From contig NC_081394.1 in NCBI RefSeq assembly GCF_030684315.1, positions 1,612,001 through 1,676,000 on the forward strand: 64,000 nucleotides of DNA. The letters run 5' to 3'. This document shows, piece after piece, positions 45,415-58,859 of the stretch (positions are counted from its first letter, which is position 1; every line of letters begins with the position of its first letter). A program made the translations under genes and the position numbers. The DNA comes from Stegostoma tigrinum (Eukaryota). The notes under the pieces are model-generated. The model did not search any database, was not told the DNA's origin, and saw nothing but the letters and a program-made list of their open reading frames with translations.

Positions 45415-46200
45415 GTGCATCACTCACTTCATACTGACCCTCTAACATTTCAGCATGCCCTCATAACAAATGCTTTGACAGTGCAGCATTCCATCAGCAC
45501 TGACCATCCAATAGTGTTGACACTCCCTCAATACCGACCCACTGACAGTGCAGCATTCCATCAGGACTGATCCTCCAAAAGTGCGGCACTCCCTCAGCAC
45601 TGAGACTCCGACAGTGCAACACTCCATCAATGCTGATTCTCCAGCAGTGCGGCATTCCCTCAGTGCAGACTTTCCAACAGTGCACCACTCCCTCAGCACT
45701 CACCCTCTGACACTGCGGTATTGCCTCAGTACTGACCAGTGCGGCACTCACCCTCCGAAATTGCAGCAATCCATCAGCACTCACCCCCCGACAACACGAC
45801 ACTCCATCAGGACTGACCATCCAAAAGTGCTGCACTCCCCCAGTACTGACCCTCTGATGGTGCGGCATTTCCTCTGACTGTATGGCACTCCCTCAGCGCT
45901 GATCCTCCAACAATGTGGTGCTCCCTCAGCACTGATCCTCCAACAGTGCGGCACTCCCTCAGCACTGACTGTCCGACAGTGCGGCACCCCCTCAGCACTG
46001 ACCCTCCGACAGTGCAGCACTCCCTCAGCACTGACCTTCCGACAGGGTGGCACTCACTCCGTTCTGACATGCTGAGAGTGCAGCACTGACCTTCCGACAG
46101 TGCAGCACTCGCTCAGCACTGACCCACTAACAGTGTAGTGCTCCCTCAGCACTGACCTTCCAACAGGGTGACCCTCGCTCAGCAATGACAATCTGGCACT
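45415..46200 (+). repeat. 32-bp minisatellite filling most of the intron
   Basis: More than 20 degenerate units. Confidence 0.9.
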
Positions 46201-46334
46201 CTTAAGGGCACTGGTCCTACAACATTGGTGTCTTTTCAGGGTGTTTGTATGACACAGCTTACATTGATCACACATCTATTACAATCCAGTACTTCATAGT
46301 CAGTGCACAGTACCTGATCGTCACTTATTTTCAG

Positions 46335-46616: not shown

Positions 46617-47013
46617 GTGAATGTACATAGACTTCATTAGCAAGTTTTGAGAAGATTTGTAGCTCAGGTTGAGGTCCTGGATGTGAGTTTGCTCGCTGAG
46701 CTGGAAGGTTAGTTTTCAAACGTTTCGTCACTTTTTTTTTATTTGAAAAAAATATACTTTATTCGTAAGATGTACAAAAAATAAAACATATTTATACACC
46801 TACCCAGTCATGCAAGCCGCTCCGGGTTACCCAGGGGGTACATACACCAACTAAAGGAAAAAAAACAAAGAAGAAAAAAAAAACAAAGCAAAGAAAATAC
46901 CCCGGCAGTCGTCACCCCGCACAGTCCCAGTTGGCCCCATGACCAGTTGGGGAAGGTGCCAGCTGGGCCCAGTTACCAGACAGGGCCCTTTTTACTATTC
47001 TGGACGAGGGGTT

Positions 47014-50000
47014 TCATACGGTGGTCTTTCCCCACTGCGCCTTGGCGGCGGCTGCCCCAAGCTTTAGCGCGTCCCTCAGCAAGGTCCTGGAGCTTGGAGT
47101 GCGTCAGTCTGCAACACTCGGTCAGGGTCAGTTCTTTCAGCTGGCAGACCAGCAAGTTGCGGGCAGACCAAAGAGCGTCTTTCACCGCATTGATGGTCCT
47201 CCAGGCGCAGTTGATGTTGGTCTCAGTGTGCGTCTCGGGAAACAGCCCGTAGAGCACGGAGTCCCACGTCACGGAGCTGCTCAGGACGAACCTCGACAAA
47301 TACCACTGCATCCCCCTCCAGACCTCCTGCGCATAGGCACACTCCAGAAGGAGGTGATCGAAAGTCTCGTCCCCCCCGCAGCTGCCTCGAGGGCAGCGTG
47401 CGGTGGCGCAGAGATTCTGGGCATGCAGAAAGGATCTCACTGGCAGAGCCCCTCTCACTGCCAGCCAAGCAATGTCCTTGTGCTTGTTTGAAAGTTCTGG
47501 CGATGAGGCATTCTGCCAAACGACTTTGGCAGTCTGCGTGGGGAACCACACGACGGGATCCACCCTCTCGTTTTCCCAAAGGGTCTCAAAAATACTACGT
47601 GCTGACCACTGCCTGACGGCCTTGTGGTCAAAGGTGTTTCCCTTCAAAAATTTCTCCACGAAGGACAGGTGGTACGGGACGGTCCAACTACTCGGAGCAT
47701 TCCGCGGCAACGAGGCCAGGCCCATCCTTCGCAACACCGGGGACAGGTAGAACCTCAGTAAGTAGTGACACTTGGTGTTTGCGTACTGAGGATCTACGCA
47801 CAGCTTGATGCAGCCGCACACAAAGGTAGCCGTCAGGGCGAGGGTGGCGTTCGGTACACCCTTCCCTCATTTTCCAGGTCTTTGTACATGGTGTCCCTGC
47901 GGACCCGGTCCATCCTCGACCCCCAAATGAAGTGGAAGATGGCCCGGGTGACGGCAGCGGCGCAGGTCCAGGGAATAGGACAGGCCTGCGCCACATACAA
48001 CAGTACCGAAAGGCCCTCGCACCTGACAACCAGATATTTACCTGCGATGGAGAGAGAGACCGGAGCGTCCACCTGCCCAGCTTCTGCTTCAATTTGGTGA
48101 TACGCTCCTCTCAAGTCTTAGTGCACGCCCCAGCTCCACCGAACCAAACACCCAGCACCTTCAGGTAGTCTGTCCTGACGGTGAAGGGGATGAAGGAGCG
48201 GTCGTCCCAGTTCCCGAAGAACATGGCCTCGCTCTTACTCCTACTGACTTTGGCACCCGAGGCCGGTTCAAACTGGCCGCAGATGTCCAACAGCCTGCTC
48301 ACCGACCGACGATCGGTGCAGAAGACGGCCACATCGTCCATGTACAGGGAGGTCTTGACCTGGAGGCCTCCGCTGCCTGGGATAGTCACGCCCTTCAGGC
48401 TCACGTCCTTCCTGATGGATGCGACGAAGGGCTCCACACAGCACACGAACAAGGCAGGAGAGAGCGGGCAGCCCTGCCTGACTCCAGATCTGACGGGAAA
48501 ACTGTCCGATTCCCACCCGTTGATCGAGACTGCGTTAACGATGTTGGCATAGAGCAGCCGGATCCAATTGCGGATGCCCTCCCCGAACCCCAATTTGGAG
48601 AGGACGTCCCTCATGTAAGCATGAGAGACCCTGTTGAAGGCCTTCTCTTGGTCCAGGCTGACGAGGCAGGTGTCCACCCGCCTGACCTGTACGTAGGTGA
48701 TCGTATCCCTGATGAGCGCGAGGCTCTCAGCGATCTTCCTGCCCGGCACAGCACAGGTTTGGTCAGGGTGAATCACCGACTCCAGGACAGACCTGACCCG
48801 GTTGGCTATGACCTTGGCCAGGATTTTGTAGTCCACGTTCAATAGTGAAATGAGACGCCAATTCTTAATTTCTTCCCTCTCCCCCTTCCTCTTGTAAATG
48901 AGGGTGATGATGCCCTTCCTCATGGACTTGTACATTTTCCCTGCCCAAGGCGCACTATCGTACACCTCCAGCAGGTCCTGGCCGACCAGTTCCCACAGAG
49001 CAGAATACAGCTCGACTGGTAAGCCGTCGCTTCCGGGAGTCTTATTTCTCTCCAAGGACTTGAGGGCTCTGGTCAGCTCGTCCAGGGATATCGGCCAGTC
49101 CAGCCACTCCCTCGTGCCGTCATCTAAGACCTCCATGATAGACGACAGGAACGACTCGGAGGCCGTGCTGTCCGTGGGCTTCGTGTCGTACAGTCCAGCA
49201 TAGAAGGATCTGCTTATCCTCAAAATGTCGGGCCAAGACGACGTCACCGAGCCGTCGTCCTCCTTCAACCGGCTAAGCCCAGAGCTCTCTTTGTGCACCT
49301 TCTGAAAGAAGAAACGTGAGCACATCTCATCCTGCACCAGCGAGTGGACCCTGGACCAGAAGATTATCCTGGAGGCCTCCGCGGCGAAGAGCGAGGCTTG
49401 CTGGCCCCTCACCTCACGGAGGTCCTCCGTGACATCGACCCCCATCAACTGCAGAAGGAGCATGTTCTGCACCCTTTTCTGGAGTCACAACAGCTTTCCC
49501 CGCCTCTCTCTCGCCTTCCGAACACCCTTGAGGACAAAGAACCTCTTGATGTTCTCCTTCACCGTCTCCCACCAGTCGCCCAGAGACTCAAAGAGGGGTT
49601 TCACAGTTCTCCAAATGGCGTACTCCCTCTTAAGCTCCTCGACGTTCTCTGGGGTCAACAGAGTCGTGTTGAGCTTCCACGTCCCCTTGCCGGCCGGCTG
49701 ATCGTCCTGTAAGTGACAGTCGGCCAGCAGGAGGCAGTGGTCAGAGAAGAACATCGGCTCGACGCCGGTGGACCTGACCGAGAACGCCCGTGACACAAAC
49801 AGGAAGTCTATCCTTGAGCGAATAGACTCATCTGGCCGTGACCAGGTGTAACTCCGCTGCGCTCTGTCTGCAGGGGTGCTGAAGACATCGAGCGGCTTGG
49901 CGTCCTTCACCGTGCCCATCAGGAATCTGGACGTGACGTCCAGTTGACTCCCCCCACCCGCTGTCCCCGCGCCGGATCTTCCATCTGCATTGATGGTGAA

Positions 50001-50432
50001 GTTGAAGTCTCCGCCTAGGATGACCGGCCTGGACGTAGCCAGCAGGGGTGGAAGCCGCTGCAGGACGGCCAACCGCTCACTCCGTACCACTGGGGCGTAC
50101 ACGTTGATCAGCCTCAGGGGAGCGTTCCTGTAGGTGACGTCAGCCACTAGGAGGCGCCCCCCCACCACCTCCTGAACTTGAGAGATGGTGAAGTTGTGCC
50201 CCCGCAGCAGAATAGCCAGGCCCGAGGAGCGACAGTCGTTACCCCCCGACCAGATTGAAGGCCCACAGGTCCAGGCGCCGGACCATTTCCCGTACCTGCC
50301 GAGGTGCGGTATCCCGCACTCCTGCAGAAACAGGAGGTCCGCCTTGATGGTGGTCAGGTAGGCCAACGTGGACACACATCTCGCGGTTGGCTTGACCCTG
50401 CGCACATTAATGCTCGCAACTCGTACCCCCAT
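47014..50432 (-). pseudogene. Tx1 ORF2 (APE endonuclease - reverse transcriptase - zf-RVT), interrupted
   Basis: SINVR, LQEC, INVYAP, GGDFN, SRIDF, SDH; [29 protein letters not shown]; CPRGSCG...HLLLEC. Stops near 49485 and 48111, and frameshifts near 48060 and 47860. Confidence 0.9.
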
Positions 50433-51874
50433 TGTGGGCAGTGACCGCAGTACCCTCCCCAAGTCCAAGGTCCAGCCCCTCCATCTGTCCCTTCATGCCC
50501 ATTGCCCGGGCTAACTGCTGGACGCTCTCTGGGCTCTGGAAACCGACCGTGCTGCCTTCTGGGTGGCATCCCCCCGTCGGGGGTAAGGAGTGCGGAGAGT
50601 CCGGCTCTGGGTCAGGCTGGGGATGCATTGTTTCCTCCTTCCCGCTTGGAAGTTCCGGGGGGGCCTCCAGTGCCACAGCGGCACGTGACTGGGTGTCGGA
50701 GGGAGCCTCAGGACGCCTCCCATCACCTGGAAGCGTGGTGCTGCTTTCCTTGTCCCTTGAGATCTTTAACTTCTGCTTCGGGCGGGCCCTCTCCGAATCC
50801 CCCTCGTCAGAGGAGCTCTTATAGCCCCCTTGTAGCTGCCTCTTCCTGCCTGATGGTTGCGGTTCCTGGGCCCGCCGACGCACCTTCCTCCTCGTTTTCC
50901 AGACCGTCGTCCACTCCCCTGGGTCGCCTGTCGCCGCCTCCATCGACTCCGGGTTGTCGGGGGGGGACCGGAGCCTGCAGAGGCGCTTTGCTGGCCTCGG
51001 GACCGTCCTGCAGGCCTGGGCCCTCCTGCACGACCTGGCCCTCCTGCACATTAGTAGAGTCCTTGCTGGGCCCTGGTGCCTTCCTCTCCTCCGGGGGGGC
51101 TGGCCCCGCATTGCTCTTTCCGGCGACCTGGGCGTAGGAGGTCCCCCACTGCGGGCATGCCCTATAGAGGTGGCCCGCTTCCCCGCAAAGGTTGCAGCTT
51201 CTCTCTCGTGGGCAATCCTTTGCAAGGTGTCCCTCCTCCCTGCAGTTCCTGCAGATGGTGGCTTTGCAGTCGGCCGCCACGTGACCTGACCTACCACAGG
51301 CATGGCAGACTTTAGGTTGCCCTGTGTAGGTCAGGTAGCCCTTGCTCCCGCCGATCGCGAAGCTGGACGGTGGGTGTACGACGTTCCCGTCCGCGCCCAT
51401 CCTCAGCGTCACCTTGACCTGCCTCTTACTGGTCCAGATGCCAAAGGGGTCCATGATATCAGTTAGGCCCCCTTCCACCTTCACGTACCTTCCAAGGAAG
51501 GTCAGGACATCAACTGCTGGCACATGTGGGTTGTACATGTGTACAGTCACCATACGGCTCCTCTGCGCTGGCATCACAAACAGCGGGACAGCGGTCAATA
51601 CAGAGAGGGGGCCCTCACCTCCTTTCTCCTTGAAAACCTCCAGGAAGCGCTCGCAAAGCTTGGCACTCCGGAAGGTCACATCGTAAAAACCTCCTCCGGG
51701 GAAATCCTGCAGGCAGTAAATGTCCGCAGCAGCAAACCCACAACAGTCCAACAGGACCCTCTTCACGAAGAAGGTGCGGTCCACAGGTGCACCTTCATCC
51801 ACCTTCTTTACGGAAACACGGATGGTGTTCCGGACCCCCTGACCTGGGGCACGAGCACTCGCCACAGCCATCAT
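50407..51874 (-). pseudogene. Tx1 ORF1 (gag-like, ZCCHC3-like, three CCHC zinc knuckles), frameshift near 50965
   Basis: CHACGRSGHVAADC, CRNCREEGHLAKDC, CNLCGEAGHLYRAC; overlaps the ORF2 start. Confidence 0.85.
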
Positions 51875-52068
51875 TGCAGGTTGGCTGCTCCCCTGAACCA
51901 GCGTTAGGCCGAAGCCAGCATTAAGATCCACTGGTTGCAAGGGTGTACAGCCAACCCGATGTCCTCCTTTCACCTCCAAGACGGCACTCTCCTCCTCTCG
52001 GTCCACAAGAGAGTGGTTCTTTATTGTGTTCGAGATGTAAGCTGGTTCACTGAGCTGTAAGGTTTGTT

Positions 52069-52110
52069 CCCAGACGTTTCGTCACCATTCTAGGTAACGT
52101 CAACAGTGAG
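52069..52110 (-). ncRNA. Type-I minimal hammerhead motif spanning the PLE/Tx1 5' junction (core mutated CUGAUGA>CUGUUGA in this copy)
   Basis: CUCA-CUGUUGA-C-GUUACC-UAGAAU-GGUGAC-GAAA-CG-UC|UGGG; stem I CUCA/UGGG, stem II GUUACC/GGUGAC, palindromic helix III. Confidence 0.7.
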
Positions 52111-52709
52111 CCTCCGACGAAGCGCTGGTGTTATGTCCCGCTTTCTATTTATCTGGTTAGGTTTCCTTGGGTGGGTGATGTCATTTCCTGCGTTGGTGAT
52201 GTCATTTCCTGTTCTTTTTCTCAGGGGATGGTAGATTGGCTCCAAATCAATGTGTGTGTTGATGGAGTTCCAGTTGCAATGCCATGCTTCTAGGAATTCT
52301 CGTGCGTGTCTCTGTTTGGCTTGTCCTAGGATGGATGTGTTGTCTCAATCAAAGTGGTGTCCTTCCTCATCTGTATGTAAGGATACGAGTGATAGTGGGT
52401 CATGTCGTTTTGTGGCTGGTTGATGTTCATGTATCCTGGTCGCTAGCTTTCTGCCAGTTTGTCCAATGTAGTGTTTGTCACAGTTCTTGCAAGGTATTTT
52501 ATAGATGATGTTTGTTTTATTTGTTGTCTGTATAGGGTCTTTTAAGTTCATTAGCTGCTGTTTTAGTGTGTTAGTGGGTTTGTGGGCCACCCTGATGCCA
52601 AGAGGTCCGAGTAGTCTGGCAGTCATTTCGGAAATGTCTTTGATGTAGGGGAGAGTGGTTATGGTTTCTGAGCCTGTTTTGTCTATTGTTTGTGTTTATT
52701 GCTGAGGAA
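52071..52709 (-). mobile_element. PLE 3' body (GIY-YIG endonuclease and pLTR start)
   Basis: TLPYIKDISEMTARLL...NIIYKIPCKNCDKHYIGQTGRKLATRIHEH. Confidence 0.9.
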
Positions 52710-55597
52710 CCGCAACCATCAGGTGGGAAGAGGCAGCTACAGGGGGGCTATAAGAGCTCCTCTGACGAGGGAGATTCGGAGAGGGCCCGCCCAAAGCAGA
52801 AGCTAAAGATCTCAAGGGAGAAGGAAAGCAGCACCCGGCTTCCAGGTGACAGGAGGCGTCCTGAGGGTCCCTCCGACACCCTGGAGGGCCCCCTGGAACT
52901 TTCAGGCAGGAAGGAGGAAACAGCGCGTCCCCAGCCTGACCCAGAGTCGGACTCTCCTGCCTCCGTACCCCCGACGGGGGGATGCCACCCAGAAGGCAGC
53001 ACAGATGGTTTCCTGAGCCCGGAGAGTGTCCAGCAGTTAGCCCGGGCATTGGGCATGGAGGGGCTGGGCCTTGGACTTGGGGAGGGTACTGCGGTCACTG
53101 CCCACAATGGGGGTACGAGTTGCGAGCATTAATGTGCGCAGCGTCAAGTCCCCCACATGATGTGTATCCACGTTGGCCTACCTGACCACCATCAAGGCGG
53201 ACCTCCTGTTTCTGCAGGAGTGCGGGATACCGCACCTCGGCAGGTACGGGAAATGGTCCGGCGCCTGGACCTGTGGGCCTTCGATCTGGTCGGGGGGTAA
53301 CGACTGTCGCTCCTCGGGCCTGGCTATTCTGCTGCGGAGGCGCAACTTCACCATCTCTCAAGTTCAGGAGGTGGTGGGGGGGCGCCTCCTAGTGGCTGAC
53401 ATCACCTACAGGAATGCTCCCCTGAGGCTGATCAACGTGTACGCCCCAGCGGTACGGAGTGAGCGGTTGGCCGTCCTGCAGCGGCTTCCACCCCTGCTGG
53501 CTACGTCCAGGCCGGTCATCCTAGGCGGAGACTTCAACTGCATCATCGATGCAGATGGAAGATCCGGCGTGGGGACAGCGGGTGGGGGGAGTCAACTGGA
53601 CGTCACGTCCAGATTCCTGATGGGCACGGTGAAGGACGCCAAGCTGCTCGACGCCTACGTACAGGACAGGCGGGTGGACACCTGCCTCGTCAGCCTGGAC
53701 CAAGAGAAGGCCTTCGACAGGGTCTCTCATGCTTACATGAGGGACGTCCTCTCCAAATTGGGGTTCGGGCAGGGCATCCGCAATTGGATCCGGCTGCTCT
53801 ACACCAACATCATTCGTGCAGTCTCGGGAGGGAATCGGACAGTTTTCCTGTTAGATCTGGAGTCAGGCAGGGCTGCCCGCTCTCTCCTGCCTTGTTCGTG
53901 TGCTGTGTGGAGCCCTTTGCCGCATCCATCAGGAAGGACGTGAGCCTGAAGGGCGTGACTATCCCAGGCAGCAGAGGCCTTCAGGTCAAGACCTCCCTGT
54001 ACATGGACGACGACGCCGTCTTCTGCACCGATCGTCAGTCGGTGAGTCGGCTGTTGGACATCTGCGGCCAGTTTGAACTGGCCTCGGGTGCCAAAGTCAA
54101 TAGGGGTAAGAGCGAGGCCATGTTCTTCGGGAACTGGGACGACCGCTCCTTCATCCCCTTCACCGTCAGGACAGACTACCTGAAGGTGCAGGGTGTTTGG
54201 TTTGGTGGAGCTGGGGCATGCACTAAGACTTGAGAGGAGCGTATCACCAAACTGAAGCAGAAGCTGGGCAGGTGGACGCTCCGGTCCCTCTCCATCGCGG
54301 GTAAGAACCTGGTTGTCAGGTGCGAGGGGCTTTCGGTACTGTTGTATGTTGCGCAGGCCTGGCCTATTCCCTGGACCTGCGCCGCTGCGGTCACCTGGGC
54401 TATCTTCCACTTCATTTGGGGGTTGAGGATGGACCGGGTCCGCGGGGACACCATGTACAAAGACCTGGCAAATGGGGGAAAGGGCATACCGAACGCCACC
54501 CTCGCCCTGATGGCTACCTTTGTGTGCGGCTGCATCAAGCTGTGCGTAGATTCTCAGTCCGCAAACACCAAGTGTCACTACTTACTGAGGTTCTACCTGT
54601 CCCCGGTGTTGCGAAGGATGGGCCTGGCCTCATTGCCGCGGAACGCTCCGAGTAGTTGGACCGTTCCGTACCACCTGTCCTTCGTGGAGAAATTTTTGAA
54701 AGGAAACACCTTTGAGCAGTGGTCAGCACGTAGTGTCCTCGAGACCCTTCGGGAAAAGGAGGGGGTGGATCCCATCGTGTGGTTCCCCATGCAGACTGCC
54801 AAAGTCATTTGGCAGAATGCCTCATCGCCAGAACTTTCAAACAAGCACAAGGACATTGCTTGGCTGGCAGTGAGAGGGGCTCTGCCAGTGAGATCCTTTA
54901 TGCATGCCCGGAATCTCTGCGCCACCGCACGCTGCCCTCGAGGTGGCTGCGGGGGGGACGAGACTGTCGATCACCTCCTTCTGGAGTGTGCCTATGCGCA
55001 GGAGGTCTGGAGGGGGATGCGGTGGTATTTGTCGAGGTTCGTCCCGAGCAGCTCCGTGATGCGGGACTCCGTGCTCTACGGGCTGTTTCCCGGGACGCAC
55101 ACTGAGACCAACATCAACTGCGCCTGGAGGACCATCAATGCGGTGAAAGACGCTCTTTGGTGTGCCCACAACTTGCTGGTCTGCCAGCTGAGAGAACTGA
55201 CCCCGACCGAGTGTTGCAGACTGGCGCACTCCAAGGTCCAGGACTACGTGCTGTGGGACGCGCTAAAGCTTGGGGCAGCCGCTGCCAAGGCGCGATGGGG
55301 AAAGACCACGGTATGAAACCCCTTGTCCAGAATAGTAAAAAGGGCCCTGTCTGGTAACTGGGCCCAGCTGGCGCCTTCCCCAACTGGCCATGGGGCCAAC
55401 TGGGACTGTGCGGGGTGACGACTGCCAGGGTATTTCCTTTGTTTCGTTTTTTTTCTTCTTTGTTTGTTTTTTTGCCTTTAGTTGGTGTACGTATCCCCTG
55501 GGTAACCCGGAGCGGCTTGCATGACTGGGTAGGTGTATAAATATGTTTTATTTTTTGTACATCTTATGAATAAAGTATATTTTTTCAAATAAAAAAA
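52705..55597 (+). mobile_element. 5'-truncated, internally deleted second Tx1 copy
   Basis: Starts in the ORF1 tail. Endonuclease is joined to RT at ~53652 (about 1.2 kb missing). 3' UTR and poly(A) at 55591-55597 mirror the left copy. Confidence 0.9.
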
Positions 55598-56150
55598 GTG
55601 ACGAAACGTCTGAAAACTAACCTTCCAGCTCAGCGAGCAAACACATGCACAGACTTCATTGTGTCCATAACTATGTCAACGTTGATAACTATGAGAGTCT
55701 GTTGGATTTATAAAGGTATTTTGCATCGACTGTGTTAGTAACTTTCGTGTGCAGTTGTGTGTGACTTAAGAGACACTGGCAGTGACACTGACACTGACAA
55801 CGTGGCACATGGGAACAAAGACAGACGGAAATACACAGAATGAGGCATACACAAACACACAGATGCAAAGGAAACACACACACACCCACAGACACAGTCA
55901 CCCACACACACAAATACACACAGAACACAGAACCACAAATATAATAAACATAGGCACACAAATGGACGAGCATACACGCACACACAGATTGCCTTCACTC
56001 TCAGAACCTTGGACATATTCACAGCTTTGTGCGCAATGTGTTCCTGTTCCAGTCCAACTCACCACATTGCTCCGAAGGTTTGAAGTTGCCTAATAAAGCT
56101 TTCCTAATGACCAGAGGGAGTCTTTCATTGTCTTATTTTTCCTGGTACAG

Positions 56151-56241: not shown

Positions 56242-56849
56242 GTAAGTGCTAGGGGTTTGTTTGCAGTTTTTGAACACACTAAATTCAAACATTTCACCTC
56301 AGAGTTTCGTAGCATTCTTCGCAACTTCACGATGTGCCAACAGACTTTGCAACGAGCTCAGGCAGGACACTCAGCACCCACAGACACCAGTGTGATGGCA
56401 ACTGTGCAGGTCAACTATTTTGAGTCATAAGGCTATAGACTTGCTTGCTGAGCCAGTGTGTTTGATCGCAGACGTTTGGTCACCCTACCACGTATCATCA
56501 TCAGTGTGCCTTCGGTGAAGCTTGGTGTTCTGTCCCGCTTTTATTTATATGCCTCAGTTTGCTGGGGTGTTTGGCATCACTTCCAGTTTGATTTCTCAGT
56601 GGTTTGTATATTGGGTCAAGTTCAATGTGCTTGTTAACGGAGTTCTAGTTGAAATGCCAGAATTACAGGAATTCCCTGGTGTGTCTCTGTTCAGCTTGTG
56701 CAATTATGGATGTATTGTCCAGTCGAATTCCTGTCCTTCTTTGCTCATTTGTGTTGAGTCCAGTAAGAATTCACCGTGGCTCTTGATGGCTATTTGGTGT
56801 TCGTGTATCTTTATTGCCAGTTTTCTTCCAAGTTGGCCTATGTAATGCA

Positions 56850-58080
56850 GATAGAACATAGAACATAGAACAGTGCAGTACAGTACTGGCTCTTCAGCCC
56901 ACAATGTTGTACCGAACTTTTCCCCTGAACCTAAGGTCTATCTAACCTCCACCCCTACCTTACACTATCATCCATATGCCTGTCTAATAGCTGCTTAAAT
57001 GTCCCAAATGAGGCCAACTCCACTACCCTCTCTGGCAACGCATTCCACGCTCCTATCACTCTCTGAGTAAAGAACCTACCTCTGACATCTCCCCTATATC
57101 TACCTCCACTCACTTTGAATCTATGCCCCCTCGTATTAGCTACCTCCACTCTAGGAAAATGTCTCTGGCTATCCACTCTGTCTAAACCTCAGAACATTCA
57201 GTACACCTCCATTAAGTCACCTCTCATCTTTCATCATCCAAAAGAGAAAAGCCCTAGCTCTCTCAACCTTTCCTTGTAAGATCTACCCTCCATTCCAGGC
57301 AACATCCTGGTAAATCTCCTCTGCACCTTTTCTAACGTTTCCACATCTTTCCTGTAATGAGGCGACCAGAACTGGACACGATACTCCCGATGTGGACAAA
57401 CAAGGCTTTTGTATAGCTGGAACATAACTTCATAGCTCTTGAACTCAATCCCTCTATTAATGTAAGCTAACACACCATACGCCTTCTGGACAACTCCATA
57501 CACCTGGGTGGCAGCTTTCAGGGAACTGTGGGCATGAACTCCAAGATCTCCACACTGCCAAGAATCTTTCCGTTAACCCTGTATGCTGCTTTCAAGTTTG
57601 TCCTTCCAAAATGAATCACCTCATACTTTTCAGGGTTAAACTCCATCTGCCACTTCTTTGCCCAGTTCTGCATCCTATCAATGTCCCTTGGTAACCTGGA
57701 ACAGCCATCTGCACTATCCACAACTCGACCCATCTTCATATCGTCCATGAACTTACTAATCTGCCTTTCCACATCCAAATCATTTACAACAATCACAAAT
57801 ATAAGAAGACCCAGAACACCATTCGTAACTGAGCACTACGTGGAATAATTTCCGTCCACTACCACTTCTAAGGGTCAGCCAATTCTGAATCCAGTCTACC
57901 ATATTTCCTCCCATCCCACACTTCCTTACTTTCTGCATGAACCTGCCATGGGGAACTTTATCAAACGACTTACTTAAATCCATGTATATCACATCCACTG
58001 CTCAATCTTCATCTACTTGTTTGGTCACCTCTTCAAAGAATTCAGTTAGGTTTGTGAGGCATGGTCTACCCCTCACAAAG
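56850..58080 (-). mobile_element. 5'-truncated CR1 LINE
   Basis: (GAACATA)n tail; YMDLSKSFDKVPHGR, WQMEFNPEK. Confidence 0.9.
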
Positions 58081-58514
58081 GGGTATTTATGAGATACTTA
58101 AGGCCTTATACAAAATTACTCCAGCAACCACACCAACATTCATGCATCAGGACATTACTCAAATAGGCCACAGCCCACTGCAGCAATCCGAATTGGACAA
58201 ACCAGAACAGGAGCACACTTACTGAGTTTTTAAAAGTAATAGATACCAAAAAAAGCACAATCTGCCATTAGCTGCAAAAGATCACAGCAAGAAGACACAA
58301 TACAACCAGACACCCTACCGTACATCAGGGATATATCAGAGATGACCACAAGACTACTCGGTGTCAGGGTAACTGGAACTCCATTAACAAACATATTGAA
58401 CTGGACCTGATATACAAATCACTGAGGAACAGAACTGGAAGTGATGCCAACCAGCCAGCGAACCGAGGCATGTAAATAACAAGCAGGACAGAACATCAAC
58501 GCTTCACCGGAGGC

Positions 58515-58554
58515 GCACTGACGATGTTACCTGGCAGGGTGACGAAACATCTGC
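58515..58554 (+). ncRNA. Uninterrupted hammerhead motif in a PLE pLTR (empty counterpart of the Tx1 target)
   Basis: GCA-CUGACGA-U-GUUACC-UGGCAG-GGUGAC-GAAA-CA-UC-UGC. Confidence 0.7.
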
Positions 58555-58859
58555 AATCAAACCCACCGGCTCAATGAGCAAGTCTACAACCTTATCCACG
58601 ACCCAAGCTACAAATCTTCTCAAAAACTTGTTTTGAATCATGTTGAGATCTTGAGGGATTGATCTTGATCTCAGAATGGTGGGGAAATTCATATCCTGCT
58701 CCCCTTCCAACAGCGACTGTGGCAGCCTTCACACTCAACCGAGGGGGCACGCGGGGCCTTGGTTTAAGGTTTCATCAGAGAGTGCAGAACTCTCACAGCA
58801 CTGGCACTGGAAGTATCGGACTGAAATGTCAAGTGCTTTGGACATCCTTTTAAATAAAA

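What the first reader, a model, noticed from the sequence alone, without database searches (positions are those of the whole stretch)
46629..55660. 9-kb fold-back: a dead Tx1 apparently carried as cargo by Penelope in a single insertion event
Seen: one 10-bp TSD (AGACTTCATT) brackets the whole structure [pLTR end, Tx1, PLE body on the minus strand][truncated Tx1, shorter pLTR end on the plus strand]. The right arm has no PLE sequence upstream of its Tx1: it starts inside ORF1, joined to the inverted PLE body through a shared AGGAA (52705-52709). Both Tx1 arms carry the same in-frame stop (ACT AAG ACT TGA GAG GAG at 48111-48113 on the minus strand and 54231-54233). In a 120-nt stretch compared by eye they differ at 5 sites, 4 of them CpG transitions. 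The complete-arm/short-arm/TSD layout equals that of Tx1-free PLE insertions in this window. Inference: one chimeric PLE-Tx1 RNA was copied twice in inverted orientation by PLE machinery, giving Tx1 a second route of spread independent of its own ORF2.
Basis: partly seen in the sequence, partly recalled or inferred. Interest (0 to 1): 0.85.

Follow-up and report, generated by a model that had tools for sequence, protein, structure and literature searches.

The report
Penelope fold-back carrying Tx1 LINE copies
A 9-kb mirror-image insertion in a shark genome has the ends of a Penelope-like retroelement but is filled mostly with two decayed copies of a Tx1-type LINE. It was most likely made in one step, when Penelope's enzyme copied a hybrid Penelope-Tx1 RNA. 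This is a neat natural example of one jumping gene carrying another, but it rests on a single locus and is not proven.

Summary
AGACTTCATT (46629-46638 and 55651-55660) brackets two inverted arms whose 3' ends face outward.

- **Left arm (minus strand):** Penelope-like element (PLE) tail, PLE hammerhead 3' part, a full-length Tx1, then a 619-nt PLE GIY-YIG fragment.
- **Right arm (plus strand):** Tx1 cut off inside ORF1, then the PLE hammerhead 3' part without the tail.

The arms are 94.5% identical. Their differences are evenly spread and look neutral. They share one in-frame stop at a residue invariant in 13 homologues. One arm has the tail and one lacks it, as published for PLEs and as in a Tx1-free PLE fold-back next door.

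Independent hits in both arms are therefore a real rival.

| Reading | Odds |
|---|---|
| One PLE integration of a chimeric PLE-Tx1 transcript | about 0.55 |
| Two independent Tx1 hits plus a deletion | 0.15 |
| DNA-level repair copying | 0.15 |

Three points stay open. I could not learn whether the stop is private to this locus. The central junction was not checked with reads. No empty site was found.

The scan noted similar mirrored Tx1 pairs elsewhere in this genome (s1-881644, s1-882289). PLE-mediated cargo transport is known from a rotifer.

The parts
46629..46638 (.). Left copy of the 10-bp target-site duplication AGACTTCATT
   Evidence: Read directly. Identical to 55651-55660.
46639..46679 (-). 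PLE 'tail': the 41-nt extension present only on this arm
   Evidence: Absent from the right arm. It matches the tail of the neighbouring PLE at 58607-58629. Its length fits the 30-40 bp tail described in PMC8557442 and PMC11167929.
46680..46731 (-). PLE hammerhead 3' part plus downstream sequence (motif B; begins GTGACGAAACG on the minus strand)
   Evidence: 96% identical to the right-arm copy and 81% to 52034-52085. Pattern search.
46732..52033 (-). Full-length Tx1-type LINE. It has a 9-A tail at 46732-46740, ORF2 from about 50432 down to 46973, and ORF1 from 51874 to 50819 (open).
   Evidence: Pfam finds ZCCHC3 RNA-binding domains plus zf-CCHC, Exo_endo_phos, RVT_1 and zf-RVT. Translations. 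Lesions in ORF2: in-frame stops at 49485-49487 and 48111-48113, and a 1-nt loss near 47864.
52034..52085 (-). PLE-like sequence at the Tx1 5' end. It is either a 13-nt copy of the target (52073-52085) plus a 39-nt diverged leader (52034-52072), or a 52-nt leader.
   Evidence: 81% identical to motif B. It ends where tail-less PLE ends stop. The neighbouring reference PLE has only one copy of the motif. Earlier notes s1-881828 and s1-881864.
52086..52704 (-). PLE 3' fragment: the GIY-YIG endonuclease C-terminus and the hammerhead 5' half (about 52086-52125, core reads CTGTTGA here)
   Evidence: Translation. Weak GIY-YIG Pfam hit. The family form CTGATGATGTTACCTAGAATG comes from loose-end contigs.
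52705..52710 (.). Inner joint: microhomology AGGAA(C) between the antisense PLE fragment and the sense Tx1 ORF1
   Evidence: The PLE family reads ..GCTGAGAAAC.. at this place (loose ends at 52684).
52705..55597 (+). 5'-truncated Tx1. It starts in ORF1 (equivalent to left 50867), ends in a 7-A tail at 55591-55597, and lacks 1188 nt at 53651/53652.
   Evidence: Between 29 and 39 family contigs read through the deletion point.
48111..48113 (-). Shared in-frame stop, left-arm copy
   Evidence: Same codon and context as 54231-54233. It replaces a residue invariant in 13 of 13 homologues.
54231..54233 (+). Shared in-frame stop, right-arm copy
   Evidence: The nearest arm differences are at 54218 and 54252.
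55598..55650 (+). PLE hammerhead 3' part of the right arm (motif B'), ending without the tail
55651..55660 (.). Right copy of the target-site duplication
   Evidence: Contigs of two samples run from the flank into the element with 0 mismatches: X1 covers 55646-55999 and X2 covers 55617-55999.
56420..58641 (.). Comparison object: a Tx1-free PLE fold-back. TSD TTGAGTCAT (56420-56428) / TTGAATCAT (58633-58641). The tail-less minus-strand arm starts at 56429 and carries RT remnants up to about 57998. The short tail-bearing plus-strand arm is about 58371-58632.

Best explanation
One Penelope-like-element (PLE) integration made the whole 9-kb structure.

**Inferred steps**
1. A site-specific Tx1 LINE inserted into the hammerhead motif of a PLE unit somewhere else in the genome, and its ORF2 acquired a nonsense codon.
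2. A read-through transcript of that locus (PLE 3' part, Tx1, PLE hammerhead 3' part, tail region) was bound by PLE protein.
3. The GIY-YIG endonuclease cut both strands of an AT-rich target about 10 bp apart.
4. Each 3' end primed reverse transcription at one of the two adjacent PLE start sites. One cDNA started with the tail and ran 6.07 kb, through the whole Tx1 into the PLE ORF. The other started without the tail and ran about 4.1 kb into Tx1 ORF1.
5. The two cDNAs were joined at a short microhomology (AGGAA/C).
6. Afterwards both arms decayed neutrally by about 2.8% each, and the right arm lost 1188 nt.

**Shown:** the anatomy, the TSD, the tail asymmetry, the shared stop, neutral and even divergence, and the multicopy, site-specific nature of the Tx1-PLE junction.

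**Inferred:** the RNA template, the double priming and the order of events.
For: - The 10-bp TSD encloses both arms.
- Both arms end outward in PLE sequence, one with and one without the ~40-nt tail. The Tx1-free fold-back next door shows the same asymmetry at the same positions.
- This matches published PLE features. In vitro, a PLE protein cleaves and extends both strands and starts reverse transcription at two adjacent internal sites whose spacing equals the tail (PMC11167929). Inverted 5'-truncated copies and a one-sided tail are typical (PMC8557442).
- The right arm has no hammerhead 5' half upstream of its Tx1. The Tx1 is joined directly to the antisense PLE fragment.
- The arms share a stop at a residue invariant in 13 of 13 homologues. 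It lies in only 33 identical nt.
- Differences are evenly spread: dispersion 1.34 with P=0.13, longest identical run 116 nt with P=0.19.
- Differences look neutral: 70 of 105 coding differences are nonsynonymous against 0.694 expected, P=0.53.
- Of 18 listed right-arm sites where the family majority differs, 4 are shared with the left arm.
Against: - The Tx1 family is site-specific for this very hammerhead, and the junction A-run|GTGACG occurs very many times. Summed contig word depth is about 3.4e5 against 12-17 for the contig of the unique flank, and at least 50 contigs differ in A-run length. Tx1 in both arms is therefore not surprising by itself.
- The short A-tail is family-wide, so equal tails say nothing about common origin.
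- Only one disabling lesion is shared.
- Whether that stop is common in the family is unknown: only 40 of 220 variant rows were shown.
- No source locus, empty allele or ortholog was found.
- The central joint was not bridged by any listed contig.
- It is untested whether the 93 nt of PLE sequence downstream of Tx1 are enough for PLE protein to recognise the RNA.
Confidence: 0.55

Rival explanations
1. An ordinary PLE fold-back inserted first and made the TSD and the tail asymmetry. Later the site-specific Tx1 hit the hammerhead of each arm independently. The left hit was full length. The right hit was 5'-truncated and removed the upstream part of the right arm, and some of the left arm, as a target-site deletion.
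For: - The Tx1-hammerhead junction is massively multicopy, and unoccupied sites read ..CTGATGATGTTACCTAGAATG|GTGACG...
- Several earlier notes from other windows of this genome report the same site-specific insertion. One argues that a mirrored pair elsewhere is independent (s1-882289).
- Microhomology at a truncated 5' joint is also usual for LINEs (established knowledge of L1 insertions).
Against: - It needs an extra deletion that removes exactly all right-arm PLE sequence upstream of the target.
- It needs two separate insertions of an ORF2-defective RNA with the same stop. My rough estimate for a parallel nonsense change is about 2% (an inference from 2.8% divergence per arm).
- A conversion tract would have to be shorter than 34 nt.
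- The differences show no trace of purifying selection.
- The arms also share 4 of 18 listed non-majority variants.
Confidence: 0.15
2. DNA-level copying. A PLE fold-back with Tx1 only in the left arm suffered a break in the right arm. The end carrying the hammerhead 3' part invaded the left arm, repair synthesis copied about 4 kb of Tx1, and the new strand was end-joined at AGGAA with loss of the intervening PLE sequence.
For: - It explains the shared stop, the shared variants, the missing PLE half-site and the neutral, even divergence as well as the RNA model does.
- Inverted repeats a few kb apart are known substrates for conversion (established knowledge).
Against: - It needs three events instead of one.
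- One-ended invasion would be primed from only about 50 nt of homology and then copy 4 kb.
- Nothing in the sequence calls for it. The structure is what PLE double priming gives without any extra assumption.
Confidence: 0.15
3. Assembly artefact: one Tx1/PLE copy was folded back or mis-joined by the assembler.
For: PLE tandem and inverted structures are known to trouble assemblies (PMC8557442). No listed contig bridges 52704/52705.
Against: - The arms differ at 162 sites and by 10 internal indels, including 1188 nt. They are two distinct sequences, not one copy used twice.
- The right end, TSD and flank are confirmed without mismatch in contigs of two samples.
Confidence: 0.04
4. The Tx1 machinery made the structure itself, by twin priming or by 3' transduction of PLE flank.
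For: L1-type elements do make inversions by twin priming and do carry 3' flanks (established knowledge).
Against: - Both arms contain the same 3' terminus, not successive parts of one RNA.
- The outer ends are PLE sequence without any A-tail next to the TSD.
- The target is not the Tx1 target site.
Confidence: 0.02

Closest known systems
Penelope-mediated mobilisation of foreign DNA framed by pLTRs in Adineta vaga (NRPS gene; Arkhipova et al. 2013, PMC3846280)
   Same: Non-PLE sequence of several kb lies between PLE terminal sequences. An inverted PLE terminus is added and a short TSD (8 bp there, 10 bp here) encloses the unit.
   Different: - The cargo here is another retrotransposon, one that lives inside the PLE hammerhead.
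- The cargo is present in both arms.
- 619 nt of PLE coding sequence came along, so this is read-through of a nested locus rather than pure trans capture.
- The host is a vertebrate.
Canonical PLE insertion architecture and in vitro behaviour of the Anolis PLE PAc (Craig et al. 2021, PMC8557442; Frangieh et al. 2024, PMC11167929)
   Same: Inverted 5'-truncated copy, a tail of about 40 nt at one end only, an AT-rich target ending in ATT, and two start sites with both strands extended.
   Different: Most of the copied RNA is not PLE. No upstream pLTR or full PLE unit is present.
Target-specific Tx1-clade LINEs (Kojima & Jurka 2015, PMC4640811, for the general pattern)
   Same: A LINE with an APE-type ORF2 and an ORF1 with CCHC knuckles, inserted at one precise site in a multicopy sequence that is here another transposon.
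   Different: The target is a PLE hammerhead motif. My library searches found no paper describing this. In this locus the copies carry PLE-type, not Tx1-type, outer ends.
L1 twin-priming inversions (Ostertag & Kazazian 2001; cited from my own knowledge, not read here)
   Same: A TSD-flanked LINE insertion with an inverted segment, joined at microhomology.
   Different: Twin priming gives consecutive parts of one RNA and one A-tail at the TSD. Here both arms carry the same 3' end and finish in PLE sequence.

Membership tests
Penelope-like element (EN+) insertion | GIY-YIG endonuclease domain at the ORF C-terminus | tested here: inconclusive
   Pfam GIY-YIG at E=0.0022, 18.7 bits, below the 22.6 cut-off. 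The translation does show YKIPC..C..YIGQTGR.
Penelope-like element (EN+) insertion | Hammerhead motif in the terminal repeat (min-HHR: CUGAUGA, long helix II, GAAAC, no helix III) | tested here: inconclusive
   The core and a 6-bp helix II are read by eye in the neighbouring copy and in family loose ends. This fits the description in PMC4209133. Rfam gives no hammerhead hit even at E<=5. Cleavage was not tested.
Penelope-like element (EN+) insertion | Inverted 5'-truncated copy, a 30-40 bp tail at one end only, and a short TSD | tested here: met
   The Tx1-free fold-back at 56420-58641 has the same features.
Penelope-like element (EN+) insertion | PLE-type reverse transcriptase in the unit | tested here: not met
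   The composite holds only the last 619 nt of a PLE, with no PLE RT. It is a non-autonomous product, not a PLE copy.
Tx1-clade LINE | ORF2 with APE endonuclease, RT and C-terminal zinc-binding domain; ORF1 with RNA-binding domains and CCHC knuckles | tested here: met
   Pfam hits. Open ORF1 and the ORF2 start.
Tx1-clade LINE | Sequence-specific insertion | tested here: met
   Both copies join their A-run to GTGACGAAACG. That junction is covered by very many contigs in two samples and in a second species. This agrees with earlier notes.
Tx1-clade LINE | Phylogenetic placement of the RT within the Tx1 clade | not tested
   No reference Tx1 or L1 sequences were available by reference. The best hits are unnamed RT proteins of amphibians, fish and rays.
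PLE-mediated transport of foreign sequence (A. vaga type) | Cargo framed by PLE termini, inverted terminus, TSD | tested here: met
   Compared with PMC3846280.
PLE-mediated transport of foreign sequence (A. vaga type) | A donor copy of the cargo exists elsewhere and the new copy is derived from it | not testable with these tools
L1 twin-priming inversion | The inverted and direct segments are consecutive parts of one RNA, and an A-tail abuts the TSD | tested here: not met
   Both arms hold the same 3' 2.9 kb, and PLE sequence, not an A-tail, abuts the TSD on both sides.

The most novel reading that the evidence does not exclude
Copying by PLE machinery is a regular, second amplification route for this Tx1 family. 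The LINE lives in the PLE hammerhead and is co-transcribed with its host element. It is multiplied both by its own ORF2 and, dead or alive, whenever PLE reverse-transcribes a read-through RNA. Part of the very many Tx1-PLE junctions in this shark would then be PLE products.
Probability: 0.2. Interest if true: 0.7.

Novelty: new variant of a known kind. Interest (0 to 1): 0.45.

Why it matters
**If the single-event reading is right**
- The locus is a natural record of PLE double-strand priming in vivo, with two start sites and both strands extended, on a 6-kb template that is mostly foreign. So far this behaviour has been shown only in vitro for one lizard element.
- A LINE that parasitises a PLE can be multiplied by its host element even after its own ORF2 is broken.
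- This bears on how nested transposons co-evolve.
- It also bears on how copy numbers and 'site-specific' junction counts should be read in PLE-rich genomes such as those of sharks.

**If the rivals are right**
- The locus is an ordinary nested insertion with a deletion or a repair event.

Tried and rejected
- **Rfam:** no hammerhead match at gathering or permissive thresholds. min-HHRs lack helix III, so this is not evidence against the motif.
- **Read laying:** all usable runs were contigs. Only 40 of 220 variant rows and 15 of 165 joints were shown. The family-wide state of the shared stop, other inverted joints and the central joint could therefore not be read. The missing row at 54233 is uninformative, because only 14 of roughly 80 expected right-private sites were listed.
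- **Empty-site test:** organism B (X5) holds the Tx1 and PLE families but nothing at 90% or better over the flank 55800-55999. The high depth of organism C (X10) in that flank bin came with CA-repeat loose ends and gave no usable empty site.
- **The search for homologous proteins with the RT piece:** no same-species copies. The best hits were 63-77% identical and partial, so there was no outgroup copy from this genome.
- **The look-up of encoding contigs:** Other genomic copies could not be fetched.
- **Paralogous empty site in the window:** none found.
- **dN/dS:** simple Nei-Gojobori gave 0.62. I rejected this as a signal of selection once the observed transition and CpG bias was modelled.
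- **A-tail length as evidence of common origin:** rejected, because the family majority has the same 7-A run.
- **Motif A as a Tx1 target duplication of 52 nt:** rejected, because it is only 81% like motif B while the two B copies are 96% alike.
Full report
**Anatomy**

The 10-bp repeat AGACTTCATT is present at 46629-46638 and 55651-55660. Between the two copies, the repeat finder reports 11 collinear inverted blocks that pair 46684-50867 with 52705-55645 at 88-96% identity.

Pfam on the open pieces of the left arm (minus strand) gives:
- an ORF1 with two ZCCHC3-type RNA-binding domains and CCHC knuckles (50819-52006);
- an APE endonuclease (49485-50468);
- an RT (48111-49472);
- a zf-RVT domain (46973-47821).

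The right arm (plus strand) repeats the APE, RT and zf-RVT parts. ORF1 is open from an ATG at 51874, and ORF2 starts at 50432. The left arm therefore holds a full-length Tx1-type LINE of about 5.3 kb, ending in a 9-A run at 46732-46740.

Beyond the Tx1 5' end, 52086-52704 translates on the minus strand to the C-terminus of a GIY-YIG endonuclease typical of Penelope-like elements (PLEs). The Pfam hit is below the cut-off. Outside the A-run, 46639-46731 is the PLE 3' end.

The right arm begins at 52705, inside Tx1 ORF1 (equal to left 50867). It is joined to the antisense PLE fragment at AGGAA(C). It ends with a 7-A run, 53 nt of PLE sequence, and then the TSD.

**The outer ends are PLE ends**

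The left arm ends with about 41 nt (46639-46679) that the right arm lacks.

The same window has a Tx1-free PLE fold-back at 56429-58632, with a 9-bp TSD matching at 8 of 9 positions. One of its arms ends with the homologous 39-nt extension, and the other stops at the same position as our right arm. In that neighbour the tail is on the short arm, and the long arm carries RT remnants. So which arm has the tail varies.

The literature describes exactly this layout:
- PLE insertions often have an inverted 5'-truncated copy and a 30-40 bp tail at one end only (PMC8557442).
- In vitro, a lizard PLE protein cuts and extends both strands and starts reverse transcription at two adjacent internal sites. 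The sequence between those sites is the tail. The enzyme prefers AT-rich targets with ATT (PMC11167929).

The composite's TSD ends in ATT.

Earlier notes of this scan say the genome holds a Tx1 family that inserts at one bond of the PLE hammerhead and carries a diverged PLE-like leader. My own data agree:
- In the neighbouring PLE the motif occurs once and is followed by the tail. In the composite it flanks Tx1 on both sides: 46680-46731 and 52034-52085, only 81% alike. The upstream copy ends where tail-less PLE ends stop.
- Contigs of two samples of the same species and of a second species cover the Tx1/PLE stretch at summed word depths of 1e5-1e6. The contig of the unique flank has 12-17. 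The tool warns that this is not a copy number, so I conclude only 'very many copies'.
- The junction A-run|GTGACG is bridged by at least 50 contigs that differ in A-run length.
- Between 50 and 57 contigs per sample show the unoccupied site ..CTGATGATGTTACCTAGAATG|GTGACG...
- The core CUGAUGA, a 6-bp helix II and GAAAC fit the min-HHR of PLEs (PMC4209133). Rfam does not detect it.

Tx1 is therefore not random cargo. It is a resident of this PLE's ribozyme. That makes chimeric PLE-Tx1 RNA plausible, and it also makes independent hits in both arms plausible.

**Comparison of the arms**

- A global alignment has about 2941 shared positions with 162 differences (5.5%). Over the slightly longer alignment (165 differences) there are 118 transitions, 59 of them CpG-type. 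The alignment has 10 internal indels, plus the ~40-nt tail that only the left arm has. One indel is an 1188-nt deletion in the right arm, which 29-39 family contigs read through.
- Differences are evenly spread: index of dispersion 1.34 with P=0.13, and longest identical run 116 nt with P=0.19.
- The shared stop (48111-48113 and 54231-54233) replaces a residue that is the same in all 13 homologues aligned.
- The stop sits between arm differences at 54218 and 54252. A conversion tract explaining it would have to be shorter than 34 nt.
- It is the only disabling lesion common to both arms. The other stop, the 1-nt loss and the 7-nt loss are private or cannot be compared.
- Of 105 coding differences, 70 are nonsynonymous. 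A model using the observed transition and CpG bias expects 0.694 (P=0.53). The naive dN/dS of 0.62 is explained by that bias. The arms have therefore decayed neutrally since they separated.
- Of the 18 listed right-arm positions where the family majority has another base, 14 are private to the right arm and 4 are shared with the left arm (53703, 55336, 55349, 55391). Their common ancestor was already slightly off the family majority.

**Weighing the explanations**

*Single PLE event on a chimeric transcript.* This needs one step. It predicts every feature: PLE ends with and without the tail, one TSD, Tx1 joined to the PLE motif identically in both arms, no PLE half-site upstream of the truncated right Tx1, a microhomology joint, and shared lesions. 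The left cDNA runs through the rebuilt hammerhead at the Tx1 5' junction. That copy reads CTGTTGA where the family reads CTGATGA, and PLE min-HHRs cleave poorly as monomers, so an uncleaved template is reasonable. When that change arose is unknown.

*Independent insertions.* This needs a target deletion that removes exactly the right arm's upstream PLE. It also needs two insertions of a defective RNA carrying the same stop. I estimate a parallel nonsense change at roughly 2% (an inference).

*DNA-level repair copying from the left arm.* This explains the data equally well but needs three events.

*Assembly artefact.* This is unlikely because the arms are clearly different sequences, and the right boundary is confirmed in contigs of two samples. 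The central joint was not verified.

*Tx1 twin priming or 3' transduction.* The anatomy contradicts both.

**What is missing**

- I could not obtain other copies of this family from the same genome.
- Read laying printed only part of its tables. The frequency of the stop in the family, a donor locus and other such composites remain untested.
- The flank was not found in the related species at 90% identity, so there is no empty-site test.
- The scan has noted similar mirrored Tx1 pairs on other pieces of this genome. One was read as cargo (s1-881644) and one as independent insertions (s1-882289). Both are unchecked.

**Novelty**

PLE transport of foreign DNA framed by its termini is known from a rotifer (PMC3846280). 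What is new here is the cargo, a LINE that parasitises the PLE's own ribozyme, and that it occurs in a vertebrate with cargo in both arms. My searches of the held library found no description of it. I rate it a new variant of a known kind, of moderate interest, resting on one locus.

Noticed in passing
window 52086-52125 (minus): The hammerhead 5' half next to the Tx1 5' end reads CTGTTGAC where family contigs read CTGATGAT, a change in the conserved catalytic core. If it predates the event, it would have kept the PLE-Tx1 RNA uncut.
   Followed up: partly
window 52034-52085 (minus): The PLE-like leader of Tx1 ends at the same position as tail-less PLE ends. This suggests the ancestral Tx1 master picked up its leader from a tail-less PLE terminus. 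It belongs to the separate finding on hammerhead-targeting Tx1 (s1-881864, s1-881828).
   Followed up: no
window 53651/53652 versus 48698-49885: The right-arm deletion is 1188 nt, a multiple of three. It fuses APE and RT in frame, with 3 nt (CGA) of microhomology. This is probably coincidence.
   Followed up: partly
window 45518-46228: An array with a 33-nt period (14 or more overlapping copies, 60-83% alike), GC-rich, lies just upstream of the insertion site.
   Followed up: no
window 56420-58641: An older PLE fold-back with arms about 83% alike and both hammerhead sites unoccupied by Tx1. Both sites carry substitutions in or next to the Tx1 target (GGTGACCAAACG and GAAACATCTG). An (ATAGAAC)n run lies at about 56850-56875.
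   Followed up: partly
Read laying joints 52164>55621, 52195>55598, 52613>55608: Contigs from elsewhere in the genome join antisense PLE sequence directly to the last 25-50 nt of a sense PLE end. These are mini fold-backs with very short second arms, as in note s1-882135.
   Followed up: no
runs X5 (organism B) and X10 (organism C): Two other species hold contigs at least 90% alike to this Tx1 and PLE. Organism B also shows the unoccupied hammerhead site, so the pair predates the species split or has moved between them.
   Followed up: no
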